From Octopus bimaculoides (lineage: Eukaryota), in contig NC_068998.1 in the NCBI RefSeq assembly GCF_001194135.2, positions 48,854,227 to 48,912,868 on the forward strand: a stretch of DNA of 58,642 bases. The letters are read 5' to 3'. Shown one piece after another: positions 18,588-56,695 of the stretch. A program made the position numbers and the translations under genes. Numbering within the stretch: position 1 is the stretch's first letter; each line of letters begins with the position of its first letter. A model generated the notes under the pieces. It made no database searches and had not been told where the DNA came from. It worked only from the letters and a program-made list of their open reading frames with translations.

Positions 18588-18835
18588 GACCCCTGTTGTA
18601 CTCTTTCACCACAACTTTCTCTCACTCTTACTTCCTCTTTCTGTTGTGCCTGTAATTCAAAGGGTCAGCCTTGTCACTATGTCTCACGCTGAATATCCCC
18701 GAGAACTACGTTAAGGGTACACGTGTCTGTGGAGTGCTCAGCCACTTGCACGTTAATTTCACGAGCTGGCTGTTCCGTTGATCGGATCAACTGGAACCCT
18801 CGTCGTCGTAAGCGACGGAGTGCCAACAACAACAA
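18588..18835 (+). mobile_element. SINE family C, 3' portion (5' part in gap)
   Basis: Near-identical to the body and tail of 26141-26524; ends GGAGTGCCAACAACAAC. Confidence 0.85.
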
Positions 18836-26140: not shown

Positions 26141-26524
26141 GTTGTTGGCACTCCGTCGCTTACGACGTCGAGGGTTCCAGTTGATCCGATCAACGGAACA
26201 GCCTGCTCGTGAAATTAATGTGCAAGTGGCTGAGCACTCCACAGACACGTGTACCTTTAACGTAGTTCTCGGGGATACTCAGTGGGACACAGTGTGACAA
26301 GGCTGACCCTTTGAATTACAAGCACAACGGAAACAGGAAGTAAGAGCGAGAGAAAGTTGTGGTGAAAGAGTACAGCAGGGTTCGCCACCATCCCCTGCCG
26401 GAACCTCGTGGAGCTTTAGGTGTTTTCGTTCAATAAACACTTACAACGCCCGGTCTGGGAATCGAAACCGCGATCCTATGACCACGAGTCCACTGCCCTA
26501 ACCACTGGGCCATTGCGCCTCCAC
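26141..26524 (-). mobile_element. Full-length tRNA-derived SINE family C
   Basis: Minus strand GTGGAGGCGCAATGGCCCAGTGGTTAGGG...GGTTTCGATTCCC; near-identical to 50836-51215. Confidence 0.9.
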
Positions 26525-27053
26525 ATGAGTTTATATATAAACATGGAGTAAAAGTACACAATACATAGAGTTAATAATGATTTCATTTCCTACAGCTGTT
26601 TCAGACCCATTGTCGAATGAAATCCCCAGCAGGTCGTAATCAGGCTTGCTATATTGGTTGCAAAATTAAGACTTTCAGTGACCAGTTTATTTGCTCTGTC
26701 TTAATGTTCGTAAAAGCACAAATATGCAAATTAAGCTATCCACAACAGCATTAGTTTGATTCATGATTGCTTTATATAGCAGCTGACTATTCTATGCAAG
26801 AAAGTGAGTTCATCTCCACTGTGAGGCATTCAACACACCGCAAAACGGTGTCTCGCAGCTCTACACCTCTAAAACACACAAAGAATTTATTTACATTCTT
26901 GTAATTTCCTCTCACAGCTCGGCTTTCTAATACATACGTACACGCAAACCTAAACTTGCGCACACACACACAAGTACATATACATGCACACACACATATG
27001 CATACACATATACATATGCATACACATATACATGCACACACACATATGCATAC

Positions 27054-32590: not shown

Positions 32591-32914
32591 GAAGGCGCGT
32601 GGCTTGGTAGTTAGGGTATTCTGCTCACGGTCGTAAGGTCGTGAGTTCAATTCCTGGAGACGCATTGTGTCCTTGAGCAAGACACTTCATTTCACGTTGC
32701 CTCAGTTCATTCAGCTAGCAAAACTGCATTGTACCTGTATTTCAAAGGCCCAGCTTTATCACATTCTGTGTCATGCTGAATCTCCCTGAGAACTACATTA
32801 AGGGTACGCATGTCTGTGGAGTACTCAGCCACTTGCATGTTAATTTTACGAGTAGGCTGTTCCGTTGATGAGGGTCAACTGGAACCCTCGTTGTCGTAAC
32901 CGACGGAGTGCCAT
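32591..32914 (+). mobile_element. tRNA-derived CORE-like SINE sharing the family C tail; 14-bp TSD
   Basis: TSD AGTTTGATGC(T/C)GAG at 32576-32589 and 32918-32931; CCTTGAGCAAGACACTTCATTTCACGTTGC core. A related copy lies at 39696-39935(-). Confidence 0.85.
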
Positions 32915-37142: not shown

Positions 37143-37980
37143 GTGAGTAGCGGATCATTAACTGCATGGTAGTCACGGCTCGGGGGAGATAAATTGTGAA
37201 TTGAGGCATGTTTATAATTGATGAAATCATGAAATGATGAAATGAGATGGCGTACAAAGAGGAAGTTTTTTTTCTACATTTAAACATTAGTTGGGTCGCT
37301 GTAAGTGTTGTAAAGATCCTGGTATAGCTGAAGATGAAGTGAACTGAGTTATGTTTATATCTTGTGAGATAATGTATGAGGAAATATGAGGTTGTTTGCC
37401 AGGACGACTTCACCATTGAAAAACTTTCATAAACGGAGTACCGTAGTGGCCACTCGCTACAACACAAAACAACGTAATACGAGCTGCCTCATACGAAGTT
37501 CATGCTACATAATTCCAGATGCCAAATACAAACTCTAAAGGGAAAATTATATCAGTGACATTATATTAGAATATAAAAAAGTTCGGCATAAAACTTCATA
37601 ATGCAAAATTTCAGTAAATAAAATTTCGGGATAAAAAATTTCAAAATACAAGTCTTCGGAATATAAAATTTCTGTCTACTGAATTCCACTCAAAAGTGTT
37701 TGGTGGCCCCGAATGCATGGCTGAAAGTACTTCACTCGCTGAAGGTTTCTCGCAGTAAAGTCAAACCCGAAATCGGGTAGTTGCAAAGCGAAAACAACGA
37801 CGACAGCAACAATTATTGTTTAATTTGATAATGTTTTTGTCATTAATTAACCTGTGCTTCACTGTCTAATTTACCAATGTTTAAACATTTTTATGAAGAA
37901 GAATGCGACCATTGATCAACCACGTTACGTCGCAATTATTCCAGTTTACCAGTTGACCATGTTTTGTTTTACAATTTCAG

Positions 37981-38887
37981 AAGCCATCATCTGTTGCTAT
38001 CCCAGACGTCATCGCCATACTTCACGGAGCAACCACTAATACCGAGCGTTACCGACTATACATCCCCGTTTTCGAAGGATTATCATTCATCGGAGTTTTC
38101 CACTTTGTCCCCTCTTCCATCTCCGTCACAACCATCCCCAAAACCATCATCATCAACACGGTCATCTACATTTTTTCCCTCGCATTCATCTACATCATCT
38201 GCTAGAGGATGTGCAACTTCCACATCGTCGACAGCCACAACATATTCGAGGTCCACAACAGTTGATAAAAAACCGGAAGCAGAACCAAAGCAAAGTCGAT
38301 TTCTTCCAGTCATATCCAAAGAAAAAAGAGCCGAAATGAATATTGTAATATTTAACCAAATCGCTGAGATCACTCAGTATTTGTATCTTTGTGCTGCTGC
38401 AGCAGTGTCTCGAGAGAAGGTTCGCTCACTTCAAATCACTCATATCATAAACTGCACCCTCGATGTTCCGAACTTCAAAGGTGAAAATGTTGCATGCGTC
38501 AATATCCAGGTAGATGATTCTTCTCGGGCACACCTCGGCATTTACTTTGATCGTTGTGCTGACATGATTCGTCAAGCCAGTTTGAAAAATGGTAAAGTTC
38601 TGGTCCATTGTGTGGCTGGAGTTAGTCGGTCGGCTAGTCTTTGTATTGCCTATTTAATGAAGTACGAAAGGATGAGCTTACTGCAAGCTTACAAATTTGT
38701 AAAGAGGAAACGATATGTGATTCATCCGAACGTTGGATTTTGGCAGCAACTGATTGAGTATGAAAAACGGATCTTCGGTCGAGCAACTGTGAAAATGGTT
38801 TATTCTAATGTGGGTATGGTTCCGGAAGTCTACATTGATGAAGAGAATGAATTACTTCGACTTCAACAAAATTCACGCCATCGCTAA
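37981..38887 (+). CDS. DUSP14-like: Atypical dual-specificity phosphatase (DUSP14/18/21-like), main coding exon
   Basis: Acceptor GTTTTGTTTTACAATTTCAG|. Catalytic loop VHCVAGVSRSASLCIAYLMK (Cys codon 38609-38611), N-terminal IAEITQYLYL and ITHIINCT, IHPNVGFWQQLIEYE, and the C-terminal TVKMVYSNVGMVPEVY typical of DUSP14/18/21. No rhodanese domain; S/T/P-rich N-terminal extension. Confidence 0.93.
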
Positions 38888-43460: not shown

Positions 43461-44499
43461 CACACATACAGACACACACACACACACACACACGTATTTA
43501 TGCATTTTTTTCTACTTTTCTTTCAATCTCTTTCTTAATTTTCTTTCAATCTCTCTCCTTAAATATGTGAGTGATAGAAATTTAAGATTTGGCAGCGATA
43601 ATGGTTTATTTGCGTCAAATGGATATTTCAGATAATACCTCTGTCAAATGAAGATTTTAGATAACACAGTTGGAATCAAAACTATTAATATTTATACTTA
43701 TTATATAATTATTTACAATAATTTATGATTATTATAATATAATTAATTTTAATCATTATAATGCTTTCATTGATCACTTTGAAAAAAAAAAAAATTCTGG
43801 ATAAAATTTGTTTGTTGTCAATAACAGTTTTTGTAGATAAGAGAGGCAACTCTGGACTGATGTTCCACCGCCAAACTTAGACGCCATTCTTACAGAAATA
43901 ATGATGCTAGAATCACGAAGTATATAATATATTTGTGAAAATGTGGAAATTTACCTTATTTAAAGAAATGAAATCACAAACGTTAATTTTTAAACACGTC
44001 ATCTACATGAGAAAACAATTGTTGATATAGTATCAGAAATCTAATAAAAAAATTTATATGGTTGAGTAGGGACATTATTTCGTAACGTAGTATTATATTC
44101 ACCCTTTTGTCATCTACAGGAGACTACTACCAGTATGTTTCGGTGTTATCAGCCCTCTCCAGCGAGGAATATTTTACACTGTACATGTAGTAGTAACGAG
44201 GTTATCAGTAAATACAAGTAGAAGGTTGTAAGTTTATGTTGTTTTTGTCCCTCGCCACATAATCATTTCTAATTAAAATTTTGATACTCATTATATTAAA
44301 TATATGAATGCTAACTTAACTATGGTTAATCCAATGGGATGGTGTCTCTGTATAAAGTAACCTCACCAAATATTTTAAAAATTACTTTAAGTGAATTAAG
44401 GACCCACTAATAGTTTTTTATAGTGAAGGACCCCAGAGGAAAAGTCGACTCTACACCCAGCACAAAAGTGGAAATGTTTTCCCTTCTGTTATTATCACA

Positions 44500-44790
44500 G
44501 TGGAGGTAAATTGCTTAGTGGTTAAGGTGTTGGACTCATGATCGTATGACTGCGGTTCGATTCCTAGACTGGGCGATGGGTTGTGTTCTTGAGCAAAACA
44601 CTTCATTTTACGTTGCTTCACTCCACTCAGCTGGCGAAAACGAGTAATTTGAAATTGACCGGATTCTCGTCCAGGAAGTGGGGAATATTTACGCCAAAGA
44701 ATCCGGAAACCGGTCTTCTGATCTTCTGTCTTGGGAACGACCTTTGACCCTTTTGTCTTATCACATGTGGTTCATCAGTTGTTGTTATGG
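44500..44790 (+). mobile_element. CORE-like SINE
   Basis: TGCTTAGTGGTTAAGG...GGTTCGATTCC...TTCTTGAGCAAAACACTTCATTTTACGTTGC. Confidence 0.7.
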
Positions 44791-45105
44791 AAGACTACTC
44801 ATGACGAAAACCCCTCATTTGACCTACATCGATGAACAGGTGCAATATAACTGGTATAACATTGGGAAATCTGCCTGTTACAATGAACAACCATGCTTAT
44901 TGGACGTCCTTTGTCTGAGTTCTTTTGTAAGAAAAAGAACTTGTCACAACCACTTGAAGGAGGCAAATCCTTGTGGGTCGTAGATATCACTGTTCTCAAC
45001 AATAGTCGGTGAGGTACCATCTCTTCGGTTTTCTTCTCTAGAACTTTCTTCATTCGGTCTTTCAGTCAGCTTATCTGTCTCATCGTTGAAGTCTGTCGTA
45101 TTTAC

Positions 45106-45123
45106 TTAATTCTTCTCTGGTGT
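45106..45123 (-). CDS. Bcl-2-like gene, probable terminal coding exon (TPEKN*)
   Basis: Strongest downstream acceptor (TTTTCTTTTGTTCTTTCAG|ACACCAG); phase 0 gives TPEKN then TAA. Weaker alternative acceptors exist near 45659 and 45597. Confidence 0.55.
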   Translation of the reverse strand, partial: TPEKN

Positions 45124-46212
45124 CTGAAAGAACAAAAGAAAATGTGGTGTTTATATGTTAATTACATATTAAGCATGGCTATGTCAACCGGAAACATGAC
45201 ATCTGTATACTAAAAGGAATAGTCTACAAAATGGTTACTATAAAGTTTACAATGAAGTTTATAAACTGTGTAGAAAGTAACATACAAAAACACTACAAAA
45301 ATGTTAAGAAAACATCTATAATTACAATAGGGAGTCTAAAGAAGAATGATGCACATGCGTATACAAGAAATTGCTACCTTATCTCCAAATTGAACACAAA
45401 AGGTGAGATAATAACATGAAAAGCGTGAAGAAAAATGACACATTACAATCTATAAGTGAAAATATAACGAAATCTACAGCAATATTACAGAAGTTATAGC
45501 AAAAAGGGCAAACATAGAAAAAATGCAGGGAAAACCAGCTAAGATAGACCAAAATAACACTATGGAATGGTCAAGAAAAGGATCTACACAGGAATCTCTA
45601 AAAGAAACGGTCTTCAAAAAGGAACACAGGAACACAATGGAGTCAACAGAATAGAATAGCTTGAGATGTGCAAAAAAAAAAAAAAAATGGAAATAGTTCA
45701 CAACATTATGTCAAAGGTATCTAGAAAATAATTTAAATTTTACAAAAATATTGTATAGTAAAAAATGCAAAGACAGGAAATGAAAACCTACCCAGTCACC
45801 ATTTGAAGTGAAATTATCATGAATGTATGTAACAGCATGCTGTTCAACTATATTGTCACTACTGAATGAAGGGTAAGCAGATGTATATCGTCGACAGATT
45901 TCAAATACTGCAACTAGCTGGAAGAAGAAAAGACAATATATAAATATGTGTTACATGAGGTCTCTCCATACACTTTCTGCAACTTTGCGTAGGCTTCTGG
46001 GCAGGTGTCGCCATAACAACAATCACCCGATACGCACCTTCCTTCCAAGCACTGCTGTAAATAGCAGAAGTGAGCTAGAACGGTAAAACTTAGTGCGCAT
46101 ACAGAGCAGAGTTCAAGGAGCTTCACTCTGAATGGTTTAGCTTCGTTACTATAGCAACAGTTCAAATACTTATTGATCAGACCTCGTATATGTATATGTA
46201 CATCTATCTACT

Positions 46213-46308
<96 letters not shown>

Positions 46309-49300
46309 TATCCTGATAATTTATCCTGATCACACTATTTATAGCATTATCACGCGTTTGAGAAATAAATTTATTTTTGTATCTTACAATACATCTCAAC
46401 GCTTCTAAAAAAGAACAAACTTTGTTTGTTTACTTTCATCGTAAAGTTGACTTTAACGTTAGCGTCTTATGAAGCTACATTTATAAGTTCTAAAATTGCA
46501 GAAGAATTCGTTGCTGGGCAGTTTAGTTTAATGGTAAAACACTTGACATGTAATCACAGAGATGTGAGTTCGAGTCTCATGGCTGGCCGGCAACGTATTT
46601 TTCTGCATTATATGGATAATTTATCCTGATCACGCGTTTGAGAAATAAATTTATTTCTGTATCTTACATATATAAATAGATATATATATATATATAAGAA
46701 GCCTGTATTTCCTCACACTGTTCCACCAGACCTATGCTGTTTGTGTATGTACATGTGTACGTGTTTATGTATGTGAGTGTGAGACAGATTGAGGGGAAGA
46801 GAAAGTGAAAGCGAGCGAATCATTTTAAAGTGTGTTAATTTAGAGATTATATAGACCATTTAAACAAAACAAAACGAAAAAAAAAAAAAAACGATTCTGG
46901 ATAAAGAATCAGAAGTATTTTGTTTTTGGATTTGGTTTGCAAGAAGTATAATATCTTATTTATACACTAAGCGTCTAACAGTTCTAAAGGAGGATAGGAA
47001 CAGCAGCCTTTAATTTTGAATTTTAAAAAATTAATTTAAAATGGGACATAAGTGTAGATGTTATAAATTTTTCGTGACGTAATATGAAAAATGAAAAAGG
47101 AGAATAGATTGCTGTTACCTGTAGACTTCGTTCTGTAATGTTTGATAACAGTTTCTTGGCAGCCTTTTTGAAATTATCATATTCAATCAATCTAGATTCG
47201 TATTCACGAACAACGCTGTTGGTATTGTCACGATATTTTCCGTCCAATTCGTCACCCATCCGCATTAAGTTGCGTCCAACTCCCTGACAGTTTGATACAT
47301 TTAGTTTAGCTGATTTAGGAAAACAATATATTAGTAAGAATGTATGTATGTATGTATGTCTGTAAGTATGCATGCATGCAAATAGGTATACACATATATA
47401 CAGAAAATAAAATGTACTAGTTTTTGATTTTTTAAAATTTATTAATTCATTCCTAAATATGTAATTTCAGTCAAATTGCTGCAAAATGCAACATTATACG
47501 TTCCAAATATTGGTTATTAATGTATAGAGCATTGACTCTGTTAATTTATGTGTCTATAAAAGGTGCAGTTCTCCATTTGTTTTATACAAGACTTCACAGT
47601 CCACTGGCCGTGCTGTTTTAAATTATAACAAGGAAAACTGGATATATAAAAAAAGAAGTTAATTATAAAAGATACCCTCAAAAACTCTGTATTGTGTTCT
47701 TTAGGATATTTGTCTTTGTATCGACTCAGTAGAACCAACAAGAAGCGTAACTAACCGGATTTTGCTGTTGGGGAGTCAGCTTCCCATTCATCGTAAGTTG
47801 AAGTAAGTGCATTACGTAACTTTATATATTCCCGTAGAAGTTCTGGGGTGTTTCCGACAATATAGGCTGGCTGAAGTATTCTGGAATAGATATGTTCAAA
47901 AATATCATTCTATATCTGTATGTATGTGTACACATACATACATACACACATACATACACACATACATACCCTGAAATCTTACCCAAAGAAATTGCAAGAC
48001 TCTACCGTAACATAACATCAGAGGAGAGGATGAATGCATTCCAGCAGAAGACCATGCATGGATACGTTAACAGAAAGCTCCAGGGTGATAACAACATTGA
48101 CAACCAGAGAAGTCTATCGTGGACAAACAATCGGGTCACCAACTCTCACTTTGAAGGGTATGCCTTTGCTATTCAAGAACAAGAAATAGCAACCAAATTC
48201 CTAATAAACAAACGGGACAGAGAGGCGGGCAAAGCGCCACAATGTAATAACCGATGCAGACTCTGTGGAATCAGTATCGAAGATATCACACACATCATCA
48301 GCAGCTGTCCAAAAATGTCATCACGGTATTACCTACCTATGAGACATGATGTTGTGGCCAAGACACTGTACAATGAAATCCGCCGACAGGATAACCCCGG
48401 GGCTAAGTAGATGAAGACCCATATGAGGTAGAGGCCATTATCACTCACAATATAAAAGAGTATTGGTGGAATGTCCGAATAAAAACCTCAATAAAATGCA
48501 GACATAATAGACCGGATATAGTAATCTGGGACAGAGGAGAAACAGTGTACAGTAGTAGAAATCAGCTGTCCTGCGGATGTCAACATCACGCTAAAGCTTA
48601 GAGAAAAAGAGAACAACTACGCCGAGCTACTGAGAAATTTGCAGATACTCCACCCAGACTACAAGTTCAGATTCATACCCGTGATTGTTGAGGCATTGGG
48701 ATATGTAACGAACTGCCTCAACAAAAACCTGGAAAAATTAGGGTTCTCAAAACCTGAAAGAAAAAGGCTGATTAGAAGAATACAGATTCAAACCGTCAAT
48801 GGAACTGTAAAGATATGTAAAACTTTCCAAAAGTTTAGCACATAAATACATATGCATGCATCTAGACATGAAAATATATACATAAAAACGCATCCATNNN
48901 NNNNNNNNNNNNNNNNNNNNNNNNNNNNNNNNNNNNNNNNNNNNNNNNNNNNNNNNNNNNNNNNNNNNNNNNNNNNNNNNNNNNNNNNNNNNNNNNNNNN
49001 NNNNNNNNNNNNNNNNNNNNNNNNNNNNNNNNNNNNNNNNNNNNNNNNNNNNNNNNNNNNNNNNNNNNNNNNNNNNNNNNNNNNNNNNNNNNNNNNNNNN
49101 NNNNNNNNNNNNNNNNNNNNNNNNNNNNNNNNNNNNNNNNNNNNNNNNNNNNNNNNNNNNNNNNNNNNNNNNNNNNNNNNNNNNNNNNNNNNNNNNNNNN
49201 NNNNNNNNNNNNNNNNNNNNNNNNNNNNNNNNNNNNNNNNNNNNNNNNNNNNNNNNNNNNNNNNNNNNNNNNNNNNNNNNNNNNNNNNNNNNNNNNNNNN

Positions 49301-52300
49301 NNNNNNNNNNNNNNNNNNNNNNNNNNNNNNNNNNNNNNNNNNNNNNNNNNNNNNNNNNNNNNNNNNNNNNNNNNNNNNNNNNNNNNNNNNNNNNNNNNNN
49401 NNNNNNNNNNNNNNNNNNNNNNNNNNNNNNNNNNNNNNNNNNNNNNNNNNNNNNNNNNNNNNNNNNNNNNNNNNNNNNNNNNNNNNNNNNNNNNNNNNNN
49501 NNNNNNNNNNNNNNNNNNNNNNNNNNNNNNNNNNNNNNNNNNNNNNNNNNNNNNNNNNNNNNNNNNNNNNNNNNNNNNNNNNNNNNNNNNNNNNNNNTAT
49601 ATATATATATATATATATAATTTTTGAAATGGTCAAATTTGTACATTGAGGTGTGGTCTGTACTTTTGTATGAACAAGTTTTCCTTGTTTAGGCATTCTT
49701 GTACTGAGATTGAATCTTTGTATTGGTATAATGGGAAGATATGAAAATTCGGTGTTTTATTACTTGCTCATCTGTTGATATGTCCGCTCAGTGCTATCTG
49801 CCTGTATTGAGGGAAATGAATCTGTTGTTTATGCAGTGTGACTCTTATTTGAGAATGTTTGTCCCTGCTGGAATGTGAATTCCGAGCCTTCAGTTAGGTA
49901 TGGGTATGCACCACAATTAGGTCGTCTGCATTTTTTAACTGTTAGTATCGTTTGTATTGAGTAGAGTTTTGCATTTGTTAGGAGTCTTTTGAGTGATTTG
50001 TCTTGTCTTTTGCATTTAAGGAGTTTGTGTGTATTTAGGATGCTGTTCATTTTCGGGTCTTGATTGAGCAGAGGGAGATTTTGTATAATTGTGCTGTATG
50101 CTTCGTAACTGAATACCAACCACGTTCAAATACATTTCACAGAAGAATGGAGACAAATACCACTAACGCTATAGCAACTTTCGCTGAAGTTACCACAACA
50201 ATAGCCACTGACACATCTACTGCTGTTGCTACTACTATTGAGTAAGAGTTAGAAGAAAATGAAACACCATTGTGATGTGGCATTTTTATACAAAAAAGCT
50301 TGTGATTTTTCAAAACTGGTTTTGTGTTAATCTAATTTATTGCAATTTGTTTTAACTTTTTGTTCATCATGTCTAAGCTGTTTTTTTCCCCACACGATTC
50401 AAATTAGTAACTTATTTAGAAAAGAATATATTATCTAAATGATTTCTCATGTTCCTTTGATAAAGTTCTCAATGTATTTCCCTTTGTGAATATGAAATTT
50501 CTTTACCTTATATCCACCCATCCATCCATCCTATTTATCCCCAGGAAGCTGGACTGCTTCCTATTGGCCTTGACACATTACCTGTGTCCTTATATTTGCG
50601 ATGGGGAGACAAGCACCCCCATCCATCCTTGTGTGCGTTCAGGGACATGTTTCTGAGTCATTGCTCGTCATCAGCCTGAAGTAGCAACACCAGCTGGCTG
50701 AAGATGCTTGTCAAACCCCCGCAAATATAAGGACACAGGAAATGTGTCAAGGCCGACAGGAAGTGGTCCAGCTTCCTAGGGATAAATAGCAGCAGTATGA
50801 TTCCCTTATTGGGATTGTCACATTAAGTTGACAGTTGGCACTCCGTCGCTTACGACGTTCAGGGTTCCAGTTGATCCGATCAACAGAACAGCCTGCTCAG
50901 GAAATTTACGTGCAAGTGGCTGAGCACTCCACAGACACGTGTACCTTTAACCTAGTTCTCGGAGATATTCAGCGTGACACAGTGTGACAAGGCTGACCCT
51001 TTTGAATTACAGGCACAACAGAAACAGGAAGTAAGAGTGAGAGAAAGTTGTGGTGAAAGCGTACAGCAGGGTTCGCCACCATCCCCTGCCGGAGCCTCGT
51101 GGAGCTTTAGGTGTTTTCGCTCAATAAACACTCACAGCGCCTGGTCTGGGAATCGAAACCGCGATCGTATGACCGCGAGTCCGCTGCCCTAACCACTGGG
51201 CCATTGCGCCGCCACTAAGTTGACAGTATACAACTGCTTTAAAATATTAAGAATTTATAGACAATAATAAGAAATACATATAACCTACATATTAAGAGAC
51301 AAGGAATTAAAATTAGGGGCATGGAAATGATAAAGGTAACCCGGAAAGAGGGGGTAATAGGCAAGGAAGTAGTGAGGGTAGTTAAAGGTATTCAGACCAA
51401 AGAGATTTTATAAGTTTATAATGTTACTGGTGTTATTGCATGTATGATTTTATAGTTCCTAGGGGGTTTAGGGTTTAGTCAAAGGGAGACTTACTTACAT
51501 AAAGTCACGACAAATATACAGAATATGACCATTTAGGTGGAACATCATAGAAAGGAAAATAATGTAATCACCAAAATAGGATGAAGTCAGACCAGCTACG
51601 CAGGGGTTATCATGGGATAGTATTATATATAGCACAGCACATACCACAACACATAGCATATAACATATATGTAATGCAATATAATTGATCATATAACAAA
51701 ATATCACATGATTTTTTTTATATTTGATACTGGAGGATAAGTTTATAATGAATACGACACCAAATTTAATTTCCACTATGAAAATTCAAGTATGATAACT
51801 ATAATTGCCAGTTCCGAAAATACTTGAATGTACGGGTTTTGCGGGTAATACTGGACTGACTCGGTGCTTCAACTTAAGTACCTAATTCAACTGAATCTCA
51901 GTTATTTACATCCATCCATACGTATATATATATATGCATACATACATATATACATGAATACATACATATATACATACCTACATATATATATNNNNNNNNN
52001 NNNNNNNNNNNNNNNNNNNNNNNNNNNNNNNNNNNNNNNNNNNNNNNNNNNNNNNNNNNNNNNNNNNNNNNNNNNNNNNNNNNNNNNNNNNNNNNNNNNN
52101 NNNNNNNNNNNNNNNNNNNNNNNNNNNNNNNNNNNNNNNNNNNNNNNNNNNNNNNNNNNNNNNNNNNNNNNNNNNNNNNNNNNNNNNNNNNNNNNNNNNN
52201 NNNNNNNNNNNNNNNNNNNNNNNNNNNNNNNNNNNNNNNNNNNNNNNNNNNNNNNNNNNNNNNNNNNNNNNNNNNNNNNNNNNNNNNNNNNNNNNNNNNN

Positions 52301-53027
52301 NNNNNNNNNNNNNNNNNNNNNNNNNNNNNNNNNNNNNNNNNNNNNNNNNNNNNNNNNNNNNNNNNNNNNNNNNNNNNNNNNNNNNNNNNNNNNNNNNNNN
52401 NNNNNNNNNNNNNNNNNNNNNNNNNNNNNNNNNNNNNNNNNNNNNNNNNNNNNNNNNNNNNNNNNNNNNNNNNNNNNNNNNNNNNNNNNNNNNNNNNNNN
52501 NNNNNNNNNNNNNNNNNNNNNNNNNNNNNNNNNNNNNNNNNNNNNNNNNNNNNNNNNNNNNNNNNNNNNNNNNNNNNNNNNNNNNNNNNNNNNNNNNNNN
52601 NNNNNNNNNNNNNNNNNNNNNNNNNNNNNNNNNNNNNNNNNNNNNNNNNNNNNNNNNNNNNNNNNNNNNNNNNNNNNNNNNNNNNNNNNNNNNNNNNNNN
52701 NNNNNNNNNNNNNNNNNNNNNNNNNNNNNNNNNNNNNNNNNNNNNNNNNNNNNNNNNNNNNNNNNNNNNNNNNNNNNNNNNNNNNNNNNNNNNNNNNNNN
52801 NNNNNNNNNNNNNNNNNNNNNNNNNNNNNNNNNNNNNNNNNNNNNNNNNNNNNNNNNNNNNNNGCTAAAGTCTAAGTAGAAACAGTTATCAAAGAAGGCA
52901 CTGGAGTAGAAATGATTAACGGATTAGCTCTGAGGGTAATGCATTCCATGCACACGAACATAGCCGCAGATAAATGATTAAAATCGACAAAAGAATAGAG
53001 AAATTGATTTATTTACCCATCATCCAT
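45106..53027 (-). CDS. Spliced gene model (5 coding exons, 156 aa): Bcl-2-family protein with Bid/Bfk(BCL2L15)/Bcl-G-like architecture
   Basis: Exons 53027-53017, 47880-47756, 47309-47119, 45917-45792 and 45123-45106 join through GT-AG introns with matching phases (2,1,0,0). Translation: MDDGILQPAYIVGNTPELLREYIKLRNALTSTYDEWEADSPTAKSAKLNVSNCQGVGRNLMRMGDELDGKYRDNTNSVVREYESRLIEYDNFKKAAKKLLSNITERSLQLVAVFEICRRYTSAYPSFSSDNIVEQHAVTYIHDNFTSNGDWTPEKN*. BH3 is VGRNLMRMGDELD; BH2-like motif is FTSNGDW. Confidence 0.8.
45792..45917 (-). CDS. Bcl-2-like gene, exon 4 (degenerate BH1/helix 5 to BH2)
   Basis: Acceptor TTTTCTTCTTCCAG|, donor TGG|GTAGGT. 126 nt, phase 0/0; encodes LVAVFEICRRY...YIHDNFTSNGDW. 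The intron falls right after the BH2 Trp, as in BCL2/BCL-xL. Confidence 0.85.
45955..46165 (-). mobile_element. Mariner-derived relic in intron 3, next to the exon-4 acceptor
   Basis: Minus strand reads GDTCPEAYAKLQKVYGE, resembling the first mariner HTH helix. Confidence 0.45.
46517..46588 (+). tRNA. tRNA-Thr(TGT)-like sequence, probably a pseudogene or repeat-borne
   Basis: Cloverleaf: D-stem GTTT/AAAC, anticodon loop CATGTAA (TGT at 46549-46551), T-arm GTGAG-TTCGAGT-CTCAT, and a T5 run at 46598-46602. Defects: A at U33, imperfect anticodon stem, one acceptor-stem mismatch. Confidence 0.6.
47119..47309 (-). CDS. Bcl-2-like gene, exon 3 (BH3 exon)
   Basis: Branch-like TTACTAAT, acceptor TTTTCCTAAATCAG|, donor CAG|GTAACA. 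191 nt open; encodes GVGRNLMRMGDELDGKY and FKKAAKKLL (helix 4-like). Confidence 0.88.
47756..47880 (-). CDS. Bcl-2-like gene, exon 2 (ILQPAY...DEWEADSPTAKS)
   Basis: Acceptor TATTCCAG|, donor G|GTTAGT. 125 nt, open, phase 2 to phase 1; joins exon 3 as GCT (Ala). Confidence 0.75.
47969..48897 (+). mobile_element. 5'-truncated R4/Dong-type non-LTR retrotransposon (restriction-like endonuclease), pseudogenised
   Basis: CCHC knuckle CRLCGISIEDITHIISSC, RHD motif, RLE motif HNRPDIVIWD...VVEISCP, and FIPVIVEALG. Stop at 48408-48410 plus frameshifts. Begins directly after a (TACA)n/(CA)n tract; lies antisense inside an intron of the Bcl-2-like gene. Confidence 0.87.
49640..50119 (-). mobile_element. 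Penelope-like element relic (linker plus GIY-YIG region)
   Basis: KSLKRLLTNAK, KKCRRPNCGAYPYLTEGSEF, then RVTLHKQQI...KENLFIQKYRPHLN; internal deletion. Confidence 0.75.
50531..50789. repeat. 70-bp inverted repeats (50531-50600 and 50720-50789) enclosing a hammerhead
   Basis: Left arm CTATTTATCCCCAGGAAGCTGG...TTATATTTGCG is the reverse complement of the right arm with about 6 mismatches. Confidence 0.9.
50638..50680 (-). ncRNA. Minimal type I hammerhead ribozyme
   Basis: Minus strand TTCAGG-CTGATGA-C-GAG caatga CTC-A-GAAAC-AT-GTC-CCTGAA: 6-bp stem I, intact core, palindromic stem III ACATGT, GUC cleavage triplet. Confidence 0.72.
50836..51215 (-). mobile_element. Full-length SINE family C with a 12-bp TSD
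   Basis: TAAGTTGACAGT at 50824-50835 and 51216-51227; intact A and B boxes. Confidence 0.92.
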
Positions 53028-53082
53028 GATACTCGATATGAAAGCTTTGAAATTATCAAGTTATAAACAAATTCTTTCGAAG
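53017..53082 (-). CDS. Bcl-2-like gene, first coding exon (5'UTR + MDDG; ATG at 53027)
   Basis: Strong acceptor (long poly-T then CTACAG, exon starts at 53082). In-frame upstream TAA, then atcATGG in good Kozak context. Donor GG|GTAAAT is phase 2 and matches the exon at 47880. Confidence 0.6.
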
Positions 53083-54999
53083 CTGTAGAAAAAAAAAAAA
53101 AGAACAAGAAAAGAATATAATGGAGGTAAAAATTAGTTGAAATTATATAAACGAGAATATTTTGTCGTTCTTGTAAAGTTTATTAAATAATTTTCAGGTT
53201 TGTTGCTAATTAGTAATAAAAACAAGCAAACAAAAACAAACAAAAGAACACCAGAAAAATTAAATCTAAATTAAAATGATCGTCACTAAGGTGATTCTTG
53301 AAATGTTTGTATTTCAATAAGCGCTAAGAGTTATCTCTCTTGAATGACCAGGAATAGTTTTCATTTTAGTATATTTATTGTTTACTCTTACAAGATTATC
53401 TCATTTGTAAAATCAACCCAAAATATTAGCCACACCTTTATCAAATTACACCCAACTGTCTTAAATACCTGCATATATATATATATATATATATNNNNNN
53501 NNNNACAAAAAAGGAACGGGAACATAAACAAACCACAAAAAACGAACTTTTTTTTACAGACAACAGAATGAACACATAGGAAAACAGACACACCACATAT
53601 GGAACTTTTCCTTCATCAGCTGCCTCTATTCTAAACTAGGCATTTCGAAGATGAAGCATAACACGCTCTTAGAATAGCTCTTCTCGCGAAGCAAATTAAG
53701 TGAAACCTGCTATGCGGAGAATTCCAAAGTAGCAAACAGAAACCAACACAGGGGAAAACAAACGTTGAGGGCCGTTAGGCCGAACGAGATGAGATACTGA
53801 ACGCTGTGATGTGACGAACTTGAGCAGAGAGAGATAGCAGTTTGTGTTGCCTTTATGCTAGCTGAATGGAGAAAGAAAGATCTGACCACAGGTCACGTGT
53901 GATCAACGAGGAGTGGTAGAGAGAAGAAATTATCACATGACGATTCACAAGTAAGTTTTTATGTTCATGATGTTATCATAATACCATTGGTATTGTGTGG
54001 GTGGTAAGTTCCGGGAATAAGCCAGGCTGTTTTCTAACCATATAATTCGGGATCAGCCCCACTGTATGACATTTGGGGCAAATGTTTTCTTCTACTAACC
54101 GACCAAGTGGATTTGGTAGGCGAAATCTGAAAAATGTGGGTCGTACACACACACGCGCGCGCGCACACACACACGCACGCACACGCACACACACACGCAT
54201 ACACCACCGTTAGACAACCCGTGTTTTGTCTTGCTTTACGTTATCGTAATCTAGCAGTTTGGCAAAAATGACCGATAGAATTAGTACTGGGCTAAAAAAT
54301 ACTGGGTATCGATTCGACTAAGAATTGTTCAAGGCTGTGCCCCAGCATGGCCGCAGTTTAATAACTGAAACAAGTAAGACATAAAAAGATAAATAGCTAG
54401 TAAGATAGATAAACGCAATTAGTGTTGATATATTTACTTACATGGAGCACAAATGATACAGAATCAAAAGAGAAAATGAAACAAAGAAATCATATAATGT
54501 CATATCTCGATAGCTGTTTCAGGAAATCAAGAGAAAAACAGACCGAAACAGTGGCTCGTTAAGAGATAAGATAAGTGGAAGAAGTGCAGTCCCAAATCAC
54601 GAGATAAAAAAAAAATGAGAAGATAAGGTTGGATGCCAGTCTGGTGAAAGTGTACGTCACAGGTAGTCAAAGTACTCGTACACGGACAATAAGATAGTTG
54701 AGAATGTGAGTGGTATAAAGAGGTGAATAAGAGATAAGCCTTGAGGCACCGAAATGGGTGTCAGTCGGAGAAGCAAAGGTACAAAGTATAGAGAGTAAAA
54801 GCAAGTTGACCACAATGAGAAATTAAAATGTAGCCTCTTTTGTAAACATAAGTTTTACTGCACATTTGTTCATTATGTAAAATCAATATATTTCCATATA
54901 ACAAACTTTCTTTTTTTCTCTCCATACTTTCCTCCTCCACTTCCTCCGTCCAACTCTTATCTCTCTGATGACACACACACAAACGTTTGTTTTGCGTCA

Positions 55000-55090
<91 letters not shown>

Positions 55091-56695
55091 AAAATGTATA
55101 TATGTGTGTGTGTGTGCGTGAGTGTATTATGTACGTATGCATATATATATGTGTGTATTGTACTGATATGTACTGGCACAACGACGAACACAGAAATTAA
55201 AACCAGGTATATTTTTAACTGCTTTAAACATTACCAAAATATCCGCCTTATATATTTCATTAAATTTTAATAAATGAAAATATTTAGTGAAAAACAGCGA
55301 ATTAATTAGTATTTCGTGTTTCATTTTAATTGGAAAACGAAAAGGTGTGTGTGTGGGTGGGTGAGGAGGCGGGAGGGGGTTAACCAGTAAAAATTATGTA
55401 AAGCTTTTGTTTACTGATTTCTTGTTCTTTTTTTTTCCAGGAAAAAGTCTGACCTAGTTCAGAAAGTGACAAAAGATTGAGAACCACTGAATTAGATAAC
55501 GCTGTCCCATGTAGTCAGCTACTCGAAAAGCCAAAGTAAATAAGATAAAGGATAGTCAAAGCAAAAAAGCATTTACCCATAAACATACTTACTCAGCACT
55601 CCCCTGGGGACGGGCTTAAACAATAACAACTAAAAACAACAACATCTCAACTACACTGTTTACATTTGACGGATATCTGTCCTCATCTTGTTTGACGGAC
55701 AAATATCCGTCAAATGCAGATAATGTAAATAATGTACATAATTCCTCATTTCTTAAATATAGAACTGTAACATCTCAACTGTTTGATGTCTCACTTTTTT
55801 GTTGTATCGAACATTAGAACAAATATATCGGACATTACAACAAATATAAACCAAAACTTTGAAAATACCAACCTTTCTTTCGAGCGATAAAAATAAGATA
55901 TATATATATATGACGGAATGTGAGGAGGTAACGTCTGCTGCTCTCAATGTAAATCCGGTACTGTATAACAATGTACTCAAACGGATAGGTATAGCAGGCA
56001 GTAACACAAAGAAAAAGAACAGCAGCAGCAGCAGCGGAAGTAGCAGAGGTTTTCATATTAGCGTGTGACACAGAATTTGCCTACATAAGACGTGCATGAA
56101 TAAGCAGACACATACCTTATTAATGATGACATATATTTGAATGGAAGTATGTTGTAAAAAGTTTCATTTACGACAGTAGATGTATTCTCTATTTCTTTTT
56201 TCTGTCTATTTGACAAAAAATATTCTGGTGGCATACTTGCCAAGTAAGTATTTAGATCGGAGTGCACGTGGAAGACACATTTCTGCAGTTCAAAAACACT
56301 GTTGACGATGACTATTAACTTCATTTAAACATTTATTATTTCATTATATGTTGTTAAAGATTCCGTCGAGCGAAATGCGACCTGGTCACTGACAAGATTA
56401 CACCGCAGCCGTGTCGTCTTGTCAGTAATCAGGTGGCACATTTTGACACCGTATAACAAATTATAAATATTTTGCTAATTAACAGTGTTTGTGAGTTTGT
56501 GAATTACTAACAAGTATCTTCCATCCCGCAATCGTCAAAATAAATCCATCTTCCAAAAATAAGCATTGATAAAAAAAAAATAATAATAGTTAAGTTGGTG
56601 TTAATATATTTAACGTAGAAAGGAATAAAAAGTTAATTACAAATAAAAATGCAGCGAGGAAATGACAACATTAGTTCGATGACTAATATAGGTTT

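What the first reader, a model, noticed from the sequence alone, without database searches (positions are those of the whole stretch)
45106..53027. Hidden five-exon gene encoding a Bid/Bfk-like Bcl-2 protein in an apparent cephalopod
Seen in sequence: five minus-strand exons with canonical splice sites and mutually consistent phases give a 156-aa ORF that the ORF track does not assemble. It has a BH3 that fits the family consensus exactly (VGRNLMRMGDELD; compare BAK VGRQLAIIGDDIN and BID IARHLAQVGDSMD), a helix 5-like LVAVFEI, and a BH2-like FTSNGDW with the intron right after the Trp. Established: BID, BCL2L15/BFK and BCL2L14/BCL-G are Bcl-2-fold proteins without a canonical NWGR BH1 or TM anchor, and are mostly characterised in vertebrates. 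Inference: this is a mollusc member or convergent analogue of that class, which could link caspase activation to mitochondrial apoptosis.
Basis: partly seen in the sequence, partly recalled or inferred. Interest (0 to 1): 0.88.

Follow-up and report, generated by a model that had tools for sequence, protein, structure and literature searches.

The report
Tail-less BAK-like cell-death gene in octopus
The five-exon gene is real, but it is already annotated in Octopus bimaculoides as an uncharacterised protein; it encodes a small, fast-evolving, soluble relative of the cell-death protein BAK, not a true BID/BFK, that keeps the BH3 'death' motif but has lost the membrane anchor.

Summary
Five minus-strand exons (53027-53017, 47880-47756, 47309-47119, 45917-45792, 45123-45106) with canonical splice sites give a 156-aa ORF. 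Both assembly gaps lie in intron 1 and do not touch the CDS. The gene is not hidden: the protein is identical to RefSeq XP_014782357.1 / UniProt A0A0L8IA65 (LOC106877837, 'uncharacterized protein', Octopus bimaculoides).

The only homologues found among 1.8 billion representative proteins are two head-to-head O. sinensis/vulgaris genes with the same exon structure. AlphaFold models of both paralogues match only Bcl-2-family structures in the PDB (BOK, BAK, Bcl-xL; TM 0.5-0.59). A three-sequence profile hits BAK specifically (E=2e-6; hhalign 90.7%), against about 1% for BID. No Bfk hit appeared.

So this is a BAK-derived Bcl-2-fold protein. It has a canonical BH3, no NWGR, a vestigial BH2 with the family's hallmark intron after the Trp, and no transmembrane tail. 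That is BID/BFK-like in architecture but not in ancestry.

It evolves fast: omega is about 0.8, and exons diverge twice as fast as introns. The O. sinensis orthologue carries a frameshift and a BH3 Asp-to-Asn change. Function is untested; the most likely role is a soluble BH3 donor or regulator.

The parts
53017..53027 (-). Coding exon 1 (ATGGATGATGG, M-D-D-G; 11 nt, the intron splits the Gly-4 codon after its second base; donor GTAAAT)
   Evidence: Identical exon and flanks in the O. sinensis orthologue. It is homologous to exon 1 of the paralogue (ATGTCGAGTGCCATGGTTAATCA|gtaagt), whose first ATG is ATA here, so the start has moved 4 codons downstream.
47881..53016 (-). Intron 1. It contains both assembly gaps (48898-49597, 51992-52863), a reverse-transcriptase fragment ORF on the + strand (47892-48410) and a tRNA-like SINE copy (about 51023-51215)
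   Evidence: Blocks are collinear with gap-free O. sinensis intron 1 (27.5 kb).
47756..47880 (-). Exon 2 (aa 4-46): helix alpha1 (BAK alpha1-like TPELLREYIKLRN) and the start of the disordered loop with candidate caspase motif DEWEAD|S
47119..47309 (-). Exon 3 (aa 46-109): the rest of the loop, the BH3 helix, alpha3 and alpha4
47242..47280 (-). BH3 motif VGRNLMRMGDELD (aa 56-68; h1 V56, h2 L60, h3 M63, G64, D65, h4 L67)
   Evidence: HMMER and hhalign align it to BAK VGRQLAIIGDDIN. The paralogue has VAENLRTIADELE, and the O. sinensis orthologue has VGRNLARMGNEFN with Asp changed to Asn.
45792..45917 (-). Exon 4 (aa 110-151): helix alpha5 (LVAVFEICRRYTSAY, where BH1 would sit; NWGR replaced by RSLQ across the exon 3/4 junction), alpha6, and the BH2 remnant FTSNGDW (45792-45812). 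The exon ends on the Trp codon at phase 0
   Evidence: Intron-after-Trp hallmark: PMC8998228.
45106..45123 (-). Exon 5: T-P-E-K-N-stop. It occupies the place of the TM-anchor exon of canonical family members, but no TM is encoded
   Evidence: max Kyte-Doolittle 19-aa window 0.99, against 2.44 for human BAK.
44944..45105 (-). In-frame open extension of 53 codons after the TAA, ending at a TGA shared by all three Octopus genes. Status unknown: an ancestral longer last exon, read-through or recoding, or chance
   Evidence: There is no codon-position bias in the substitutions, and omega is about 0.65.

Best explanation
LOC106877837 of Octopus bimaculoides is an already annotated but uncharacterised gene. 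It encodes a 156-aa soluble Bcl-2-fold protein that descends from BAK.

What it keeps: BAK-like alpha1, a canonical BH3, alpha3-alpha4, the central alpha5 helix, and the family's intron right after the BH2 Trp.

What it has lost: the NWGR signature of BH1, most of BH2/alpha7-8, and the C-terminal membrane anchor.

Context: it is one of a head-to-head pair of paralogues found only in Octopus species, and it evolves unusually fast.

Inferred mechanism (not shown): it has no anchor, and it lacks the groove arginine that receives a partner's BH3 Asp. It therefore probably cannot act as a BAK-type pore former or BH3 receptor. More likely it works as a BH3 donor, a soluble ligand or regulator of the membrane-bound Bcl-2 proteins. 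Its buried BH3 would be exposed by a conformational change or by cleavage in the roughly 20-residue disordered alpha1-alpha2 loop, as in BID and BFK. It would then be a functional analogue of BID/BFK that arose independently from BAK.
For: Gene model: exact match to RefSeq and UniProt proteins. The same five-exon structure with canonical sites occurs in the two O. sinensis genes, whose loci are gap-free.

Fold: AF2 pLDDT 79.5, pTM 0.77. Foldseek against the PDB returns Bcl-2 family proteins for all 50 top hits (BOK, BAK, Bcl-xL, Bcl-2, Mcl-1, Trichoplax Bcl-2L2), with probabilities up to 1.00 and TM 0.5-0.59. The paralogue reproduces this. The viral library gives nothing, which serves as a negative control.

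Ancestry: the A1 profile against all PDB sequences yields BAK as the only significant family, E=2.2e-6 over alpha1 to alpha4, and BAK fragments score in proportion to their length. hhalign gives BAK 90.7% (E=1.2e-6), BAX 2.8%, Bcl-xL 6.6% and BID 0.95%.

Architecture: no hydrophobic tail. RSLQ/PILQ stands in place of NWGR. Exon 4 ends at the Trp of GxW, the conserved family boundary (PMC8998228).

Maintenance: P(ORF stays open under neutrality) is 0.033 and 0.003. Two of the three coding indels against the orthologue are in frame (3 nt in exon 2; 6 nt in exon 4). Exons diverge at 18.4% against 9.5% for 6,978 aligned non-coding bases (p=1.5e-8).

Disordered loop 31-53 (pLDDT below 50) carries WEAD|S, which is WEVD|S in the orthologue.
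Against: - There is no functional or expression evidence here. No transcript-derived copy of the protein exists in the 15-billion-protein collection; the cluster has a single member on one genomic contig.
- Omega is about 0.8 against the orthologue and 0.7-0.9 against the paralogue, close to neutrality.
- The O. sinensis orthologue has a 1-nt deletion that removes the GxW end, and its BH3 Asp is Asn. This lineage of the pair may be decaying.
- Foldseek E-values are only about 0.1, and the MSA has 3 sequences. Only 1 of the 5 models of the paralogue is confident.
- The C-terminal half alone has no detectable sequence similarity to anything in the PDB.
- Pfam Bcl-2 (PF00452) does not hit.
- The candidate caspase motif is not conserved in the paralogue.
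Confidence: 0.6

Rival explanations
1. It is a duplicated BAK gene in the course of decay. After losing its anchor and BH1 it has no function, and the intact ORF in O. bimaculoides is a transient survivor.
For: - Omega is 0.80 overall and about 1.0 in the BH3-alpha4 and alpha5-BH2 segments.
- The O. sinensis orthologue has a frameshift in exon 4 and a BH3 Asp-to-Asn change.
- The family is restricted to Octopus.
- No transcript-derived copies are in the protein collection.
- Pfam does not recognise it.
Against: - ORF survival is unlikely under neutrality (0.033, and 0.003 for the paralogue pair).
- All 8 splice sites are canonical in each of the three genes.
- Two of the three coding indels are multiples of three.
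- Exons diverge twice as fast as adjacent non-coding DNA rather than at the same rate.
- Models for two 43%-identical paralogues fold into the same Bcl-2 topology, though only 1 of 5 models is confident for the paralogue.
- RefSeq annotates several transcript variants in two species.
Confidence: 0.2
2. It is a BAK-like decoy or inhibitor rather than a killer. The soluble protein would heterodimerise with BAK/BAX, soak up pro-survival proteins, or soak up pathogen-encoded Bcl-2 mimics. An arms race would explain the rapid evolution.
For: - Exon-specific acceleration (dN 0.218 against non-coding K 0.10).
- Lineage-specific tandem duplication.
- BH3 retained, with loss of the membrane-insertion anchor.
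Against: - Synonymous sites are also accelerated (14 differences in 62 sites), so selection on the protein is not the only possible cause.
- No partner or pathogen is known.
- Only three sequences are available, so no site-level test is possible.
Confidence: 0.15
3. It is a true mollusc orthologue of the vertebrate BID / BFK (BCL2L15) / BCL-G group.
For: - It shares their architecture: BH3, BH2 remnant, no NWGR, no TM, and a flexible loop before the BH3.
- There is a weak, non-significant resemblance of RRYTSAYPSFSSD to BID KKVASHTPSLLRD.
Against: - hhalign to BID gives probability 0.95%.
- No BID or Bfk chain appears at E<=10 in the profile search of all PDB sequences, whereas BAK reaches 2e-6.
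- BID is absent from the Foldseek top 50 for this protein, and ranks 34 with TM 0.40 for the paralogue.
- The basic residue that replaces the NWGR Trp in Bid and Bfk (PMC8814693) is not conserved here (S/G/I).
- BID is not found before jawed vertebrates (PMC8998228).
Confidence: 0.05

Closest known systems
[quoted passage not shown]
   Same: It is the only family with significant sequence similarity: profile E=2e-6 and hhalign 90.7% over alpha1, the loop, BH3, alpha3 and alpha4. The globular fold is the same. The gene is multi-exon, and the exon boundary falls at the BH2 Trp (PMC8998228).
   Different: There is no NWGR (BH1). BH2 is reduced to GxW, with about 8 residues (alpha7) missing. There is no alpha9 membrane anchor: 5 residues follow the Trp, against about 35 in BAK. 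It evolves very fast and is restricted to Octopus.
BFK / BCL2L15
   Same: A small (about 160 aa) soluble Bcl-2-fold protein with BH3 and BH2 but no BH1 signature and no TM, and a flexible loop before the BH3 (PMC8814693).
   Different: No detectable sequence relationship. The alpha5 Arg that replaces the NWGR Trp in Bfk is not conserved here. The similarity is one of architecture, presumably convergent.
BID
   Same: A Bcl-2-like helical bundle with a buried BH3, no NWGR and no TM. An unstructured loop lies about 20-25 residues upstream of the BH3, where BID is cut by caspase-8. Here D39 in WEAD|S lies 21 residues before L60.
   Different: hhalign probability is about 1%, and Foldseek prefers BOK, BAK and Bcl-xL. 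Cleavage is untested. BID is absent outside jawed vertebrates (PMC8998228).
N-Bak (neuronal BH3-only splice form of BAK; from my own knowledge, not checked here)
   Same: A BAK-derived product that keeps the BH3 but lacks the TM anchor. It is a precedent for a tail-less BAK acting as a BH3 donor.
   Different: N-Bak arises by alternative splicing with a frameshift and loses alpha5-alpha8 entirely. The octopus protein is a separate gene that keeps the whole globular core.

Membership tests
Bcl-2 family (Bcl-2 fold) | Globular all-helical bundle around a central hydrophobic hairpin | tested here: met
   AF2 pLDDT 79.5 and pTM 0.77. All 50 best PDB matches are Bcl-2 family, TM 0.5-0.59, probability up to 1.00 but E about 0.1. 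The paralogue reproduces this.
Bcl-2 family (Bcl-2 fold) | BH3 motif (h1-x3-L-x2-h3-[G/A/S]-D-x-h4) on helix 2 | tested here: met
   V56-G-R-N-L60-M-R-M63-G64-D65-E-L67-D. It aligns to the BAK BH3. The paralogue keeps L...A-D-E-L, and the O. sinensis orthologue has G-N.
Bcl-2 family (Bcl-2 fold) | BH1 with NWGR at the start of helix 5 | tested here: not met
   The corresponding residues are RSLQ (window gene), GLQ and PILQ. Only the following VA(V)F is retained.
Bcl-2 family (Bcl-2 fold) | BH2 (W-x3-GGW) | tested here: inconclusive
   Only YIHDNFTSNGDW / YIRDHFTPDGTW is present: a GxW with no upstream Trp and about 8 residues fewer than BAK. There is no sequence-level hit for the C-terminal half.
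Bcl-2 family (Bcl-2 fold) | Exon boundary immediately after the BH2 Trp | tested here: met
   Exon 4 ends ...GGT GAC TGG|gtaggt at phase 0 in all three Octopus genes. The hallmark is described in PMC8998228.
Bcl-2 family (Bcl-2 fold) | Match to Pfam PF00452 (Bcl-2) | tested here: not met
   No hit even at E<=10 for any of the three proteins.
BAK | Significant, specific sequence similarity to BAK | tested here: met
   hmmsearch of the PDB returns BAK chains only, E=2.2e-6. hhalign gives 90.7% for BAK, against 2.8% (BAX), 6.6% (Bcl-xL) and 0.95% (BID).
BAK | C-terminal transmembrane anchor (alpha9) | tested here: not met
   The protein ends 5 residues after the Trp. The maximum 19-residue hydropathy is 0.99, against 2.44 for BAK.
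BAK | Groove able to receive an activator BH3 (BH1 Arg) and pore-forming activity | not testable with these tools
   The NWGR Arg is absent at sequence level. Groove geometry and activity need experiments.
BAK | Orthology: groups with mollusc BAK in a tree, while a canonical BAK also exists in octopus | not tested
   No mollusc BAK, BAX or BOK sequences could be retrieved. The literature says molluscs have all three (PMC11463336), and an O. maya transcriptome reports a BAK-annotated transcript (PMC6522055).
BID | Sequence or profile similarity to BID | tested here: not met
   hhalign probability 0.95%. No BID chain at E<=10. Foldseek places BID only at rank 34, TM 0.40, for the paralogue.
BID | Caspase cleavage in the loop before the BH3 that releases an active fragment | not testable with these tools
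   Candidate WEAD|S (WEVD|S in the orthologue) lies in the pLDDT<50 loop. The paralogue has different Asp motifs.
BFK / BCL2L15 (and BID) | Basic residue in helix 5 in place of the NWGR Trp (Bfk R110, Bid K146) | tested here: not met
   The aligned column holds S / G / I in the three proteins. The feature is taken from PMC8814693.
BFK / BCL2L15 | BH3 + BH2 architecture without BH1 or TM | tested here: met
   This is a resemblance of architecture only: no Bfk chain appeared, although the paper reports data deposition for the Bfk crystal structure (PMC8814693).

The most novel reading that the evidence does not exclude
Octopuses independently built a BID-like switch out of BAK. It would be a soluble, anchor-less BAK paralogue whose BH3 is unmasked by caspase cleavage (or another signal) in the alpha1-alpha2 loop. 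This would give molluscs, in which no BH3-only or BID protein has yet been identified, their own link from upstream death signals to the mitochondrial pathway. Its coding exons would be under diversifying selection, perhaps from pathogen antagonists.
Probability: 0.15. Interest if true: 0.75.

Novelty: new variant of a known kind. Interest (0 to 1): 0.45.

Why it matters
How upstream signals reach the mitochondrial pathway in lophotrochozoans is unclear. Reviews state that BH3-only proteins, including BID, have not been identified in molluscs (PMC8917759) and that BID appears only in jawed vertebrates (PMC8998228).

A lineage-specific, soluble, BH3-bearing BAK derivative would be a concrete and testable candidate for that missing role. 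It would also be an example of a BID/BFK-type architecture arising a second time from a pore-forming effector.

There is a practical point too. Two RefSeq 'uncharacterized' loci per Octopus species, one of them misnamed 'zinc finger protein 318' in one isoform, can now be labelled as Bcl-2 family members that Pfam misses. If instead the genes are decaying, the case is an ordinary gene-family birth and death event.

Tried and rejected
- Pfam scans of all three proteins gave no Bcl-2 hit, only noise such as SRI and NRN1.
- A single-sequence phmmer search of the PDB found nothing useful.
- A profile of the C-terminal half alone against the PDB gave no hit.
- A word-indexed search of 5.8 billion proteins, with the single sequence and with the profile, found only the Octopus family. 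An exhaustive HMMER search of 1.84 billion representatives gave 2 hits. No squid, cuttlefish or other mollusc relatives were found.
- tblastn of all family members against the window found no second copy or pseudo-exon. The weak hit at 50047-49892 (E=0.064) lies in repeat-like sequence in intron 1 and was dismissed.
- The Foldseek viral library gave no meaningful match, so a viral Bcl-2 origin is rejected.
- Global alignment of 200-nt exon flanks was spoiled by microsatellites upstream of the exons. I replaced it with collinear BLAST blocks.
- Literature searches for the locus name returned no papers. Searches for an octopus Bcl-2 inventory gave no accession lists.
- I could not target a canonical octopus BAK with the remaining large protein search, because vertebrate BAKs would swamp the list. 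I left that search unused.
- The post-stop ORF was tested for a coding signature. There is no third-position bias, so it is not claimed as coding.
Full report

MDDGILQPAYIVGNTPELLREYIKLRNALTSTYDEWEADSPTAKSAKLNVSNCQGVGRNLMRMGDELDGKYRDNTNSVVREYESRLIEYDNFKKAAKKLLSNITERSLQLVAVFEICRRYTSAYPSFSSDNIVEQHAVTYIHDNFTSNGDWTPEKN

The exon coordinates are 53027-53017, 47880-47756, 47309-47119, 45917-45792 and 45123-45106. Every intron is GT...AG.

The protein is 100% identical over its full length to 'uncharacterized protein LOC106877837 [Octopus bimaculoides]' (XP_014782357.1, XP_014782364.1, XP_014782372.1; UniProt A0A0L8IA65). The annotated gene span of 7,922 nt equals 45106-53027. The window is base-for-base the public assembly GCA_001194135.2, chromosome CM046618.1, gaps included. 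The model is therefore correct, but it is not hidden: two annotation sources already carry it, with no name and no Pfam domain.

**Gaps.** Both gaps flagged by the scan's program (48898-49597 and 51992-52863) lie in intron 1, 1,018 nt and 153 nt from the nearest exon edge. The O. sinensis loci I fetched (L002, L003) contain no Ns.

- In L003 the orthologue has an identical exon 1 with identical flanks (atcgagtatcATGGATGATGG|gtaaataa). RefSeq isoform X2 (P0002) joins it to the same exon 2 across a 27.5-kb intron.
- BLAST blocks are collinear across both gaps: window 52864-53494, 50102-50539 and 47556-47968 match L003 22006-21369, 25705-25259 and 49728-49323.
- The paralogue's exon 1 (ATGTCGAGTGCCATGGTTAATCA|gtaagt) is homologous to the window's catATATCGAGTATCATGGATGATGG|gtaaat. 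The 11-nt first coding exon is therefore real, and its start has simply shifted to the second ATG.

No coding sequence depends on the gaps. The only caveat is that intron 1 may be much longer than assembled.

**Relatives.** An exhaustive HMMER scan of 1.84 billion representative proteins found just two relatives. The word-indexed searches of 5.8 billion clusters found the same two.

- P0002/P0004 are LOC115219866 of O. sinensis. This is the orthologue, 64% identical. Its isoform X1 is mis-named 'zinc finger protein 318' because of a low-complexity N-terminus.
- P0003 is LOC115219865 of O. sinensis, with P0005 in O. vulgaris. This is a paralogue, 43% identical.
- The two O. sinensis genes lie head to head on CM016873.1.
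- All three genes have five coding exons with the same boundaries and phases.
- No second copy lies in the window. By synteny the O. bimaculoides paralogue would sit beyond the window's end.

**What it is.**

- Pfam does not recognise the protein. A single-sequence PDB search is also empty.
- A profile of the three Octopus proteins hits BAK, and only BAK, significantly among all PDB sequences. The E-value is 2.2e-6 over profile positions 10-100, covering alpha1 (TEEVFRSYVFYRH vs TEELLREYLKVRN), the BH3 (VGRQLAIIGDDINRRY vs VGRNLARIGDELEEKY) and alpha3-alpha4 (NAYEYFTKIATSLF vs NEYDNFKKAAKKLL). Truncated BAK constructs and BH3 peptides score proportionally less.
- hhalign gives BAK 90.7% (E=1.2e-6), BAX 2.8%, Bcl-xL 6.6% and BID 0.95%. 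The printed alignment confirms the BAK stretch 26-120.
- AlphaFold2 on the 3-sequence alignment gives a confident model, with mean pLDDT 79.5 and pTM 0.77. Its helices are 8-13, 15-35, 50-85, 89-100, 106-123, 125-128 and 132-144, and it has a disordered loop at 31-53.
- Foldseek against the PDB returns Bcl-2 family proteins for all 50 best hits: chicken BOK, BAK, Bcl-xL, Bcl-2, Mcl-1 and Trichoplax Bcl-2L2. TM-scores are 0.5-0.59 and probabilities up to 1.00, although E-values are only about 0.1.
- The paralogue's model has pLDDT 75, with one confident model of five. It gives the same picture, with BID only at rank 34 (TM 0.40).
- The viral structure library gives nothing.

The fold claim is therefore supported. 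The nearest relatives are the multi-motif effectors, not BID.

**Architecture.**

- The BH3 (aa 56-68) fits the structural consensus. From memory, it would fail the stricter PROSITE pattern at four positions.
- Where BH1 should be, the family has RSLQ/GLQ/PILQ instead of NWGR, followed by a conserved (L/I/G)AVFE(I/L)C.RYTS helix.
- BH2 is reduced to GxW. About 8 residues (alpha7) are missing relative to BAK.
- Exon 4 ends exactly on that Trp codon in all three genes. This is the conserved boundary of Bcl-2 family genes, including sponge Bak-like genes (PMC8998228).
- The last exon encodes five residues and a stop. There is no hydrophobic segment, with a maximum 19-residue hydropathy near 1.0 against 2.4 for BAK.
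- This is the BH3 + BH2, no BH1, no TM layout of BFK and BCL-G, and it resembles BID. However, the alpha5 basic residue that characterises Bfk and Bid (PMC8814693) is not conserved here, and there is no sequence link to either.

I therefore file it as BAK-derived, and BID/BFK-like only by architecture.

**Evolution.**

- Against the O. sinensis orthologue, dN=0.218, dS=0.273 and omega=0.80. Against the paralogue, omega is 0.70 (0.88 for the O. sinensis orthologue against the same paralogue).
- The orthologue carries a 6-nt in-frame deletion and a 1-nt deletion in exon 4. The 1-nt deletion shifts the frame and removes the GxW end. Its BH3 Asp is Asn. The deletion could be real or an assembly error.
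- These points favour relaxed constraint. Other results argue against plain decay, as follows.
- Random substitution at the observed level leaves the ORF open in only 3.3% of simulations for the orthologue pair and 0.3% for the paralogue pair.
- All splice sites are intact.
- Two of the three indels in the coding sequence are in frame.
- The coding exons differ at 18.4% (85/461). By contrast, 6,978 collinear non-coding bases differ at 9.5% (Fisher p=1.5e-8).
- Synonymous sites are also about twice the non-coding rate (14 differences in 62 sites). Both lineages contribute (39 vs 26 changes, p=0.14).
- Neutral decay predicts exon divergence equal to intron divergence. The excess could reflect diversifying selection, exon-limited gene conversion among paralogues, or a downward bias of locally aligned non-coding divergence. 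I cannot separate these with three sequences (notebook, 'unexplained').
- In O. sinensis the two paralogues are 87-96% identical around exon 5 and the 3' UTR but unalignable in the upstream introns. This suggests conversion or a conserved UTR.

**Mechanism (inferred).** A soluble BAK core without the anchor and without the groove arginine is unlikely to form pores or to accept an activator BH3. It retains a canonical BH3 packed in a globular fold, behind a roughly 20-residue disordered loop that carries WEAD|S (WEVD|S in the orthologue). The most economical model is a latent BH3 donor, unmasked by a conformational change or cleavage, that engages membrane-bound Bcl-2 relatives. This is what BID and BFK are proposed to do.

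| Explanation | Probability |
|---|---|
| BAK-derived soluble Bcl-2-fold regulator (BH3 donor) | 0.6 |
| Decaying BAK duplicate | 0.2 |
| Decoy or inhibitor under conflict | 0.15 |
| True BID/BFK orthologue | 0.05 |

**Limits.**

- There are no expression data. The protein's cluster has one member on one genomic contig.
- Only three to four sequences are available.
- No mollusc BAK, BAX or BOK sequences were available for a tree.
- Whether octopus keeps a canonical BAK was not tested. The literature says molluscs have BAK, BAX and BOK (PMC11463336), and an O. maya transcriptome lists a BAK-annotated transcript (PMC6522055).

**Verdict.** The novelty lies in the assignment, a new variant of a known family, not in the gene model. 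Interest is moderate (0.45).

Noticed in passing
window 44944-45105 (minus strand); L003 68190-68351; L002 30503-30664: Directly after the annotated TAA stop, all three Octopus genes keep a 53-codon in-frame open stretch (VNTTDFNDETDKL...DPQGFASFKWL) ending at the same TGA. The other two frames are full of stops. The chance of this in one AT-rich sequence is about 0.02. Substitutions show no third-position bias (6/10/7) and omega is about 0.65. It could be a relic of a longer ancestral last exon, read-through or A-to-I recoding of UAA, or chance.
   Followed up: partly
L003 64302-64420 (O. sinensis LOC115219866 exon 4), aligned to window 45792-45917: The O. sinensis orthologue has a 6-nt in-frame deletion plus a 1-nt deletion (tgctgtta to tgct-cta). 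The 1-nt deletion shifts the frame and replaces the ...YI.D.FT..G.W end with ...NTFVILSLQVVTGNQKEIK. Its BH3 also reads GNEF instead of GDEL. This is either real decay of this copy in O. sinensis or an assembly indel.
   Followed up: partly
window 43477-56561 vs L003: Coding exons of this gene differ between O. bimaculoides and O. sinensis twice as much (18.4%) as 7 kb of flanking introns, UTR and intergenic DNA (9.5%). Synonymous sites are elevated as well.
   Followed up: partly
L002 29976-30937 vs L003 67698-68817: The 3' ends (end of intron 4, exon 5, 3' UTR) of the two O. sinensis paralogues are 87-96% identical, while the rest of the genes is 40% identical at protein level with unalignable introns. 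This suggests gene conversion or a strongly conserved UTR element.
   Followed up: no
window 53027-53039 vs L002 10001-10023: The paralogue starts at ATGTCGAGTGCCATGG.... In the window gene and its orthologue the first ATG is ATA, so translation starts at the second, in-frame ATG (MDDG).
   Followed up: yes
L003 10001 onward (P0004, XP_036365697.1): O. sinensis isoform X1 of the orthologue is named 'zinc finger protein 318'. It has an 86-residue low-complexity N-terminus (poly-P, poly-L, poly-T) from an upstream first exon in repeat sequence. The name looks like an annotation artefact.
   Followed up: no
window 37964-38887 (+): A single-exon 307-aa ORF with a full dual-specificity phosphatase catalytic domain (PF00782, E=2.4e-39). 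It is the annotated neighbouring gene (310-aa product).
   Followed up: partly
window 47892-48410 (+), inside intron 1, antisense to the gene: A 172-aa ORF with a weak zf-RVT match (E=0.0012), most likely a fragment of a non-LTR retrotransposon.
   Followed up: no
window 51023-51215 and 26332-26525 (also 18653-18823, 26148-26318, 32738-32911, 50838-51002): Repeated elements, about 91% identical to the same O. sinensis segments. One begins with a tRNA-like sequence (ggcgcaatggcccagtggttagggc...ggtttcgattccc) that ARAGORN does not call. These are probably tRNA-derived SINE copies.
   Followed up: no
L001 1-27922 (minus strand of the locus = plus strand of the window): The public annotation has a gene with a 152-aa product on the opposite strand that spans the whole locus, so LOC106877837 lies inside an intron of another gene. 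I did not identify that gene.
   Followed up: no
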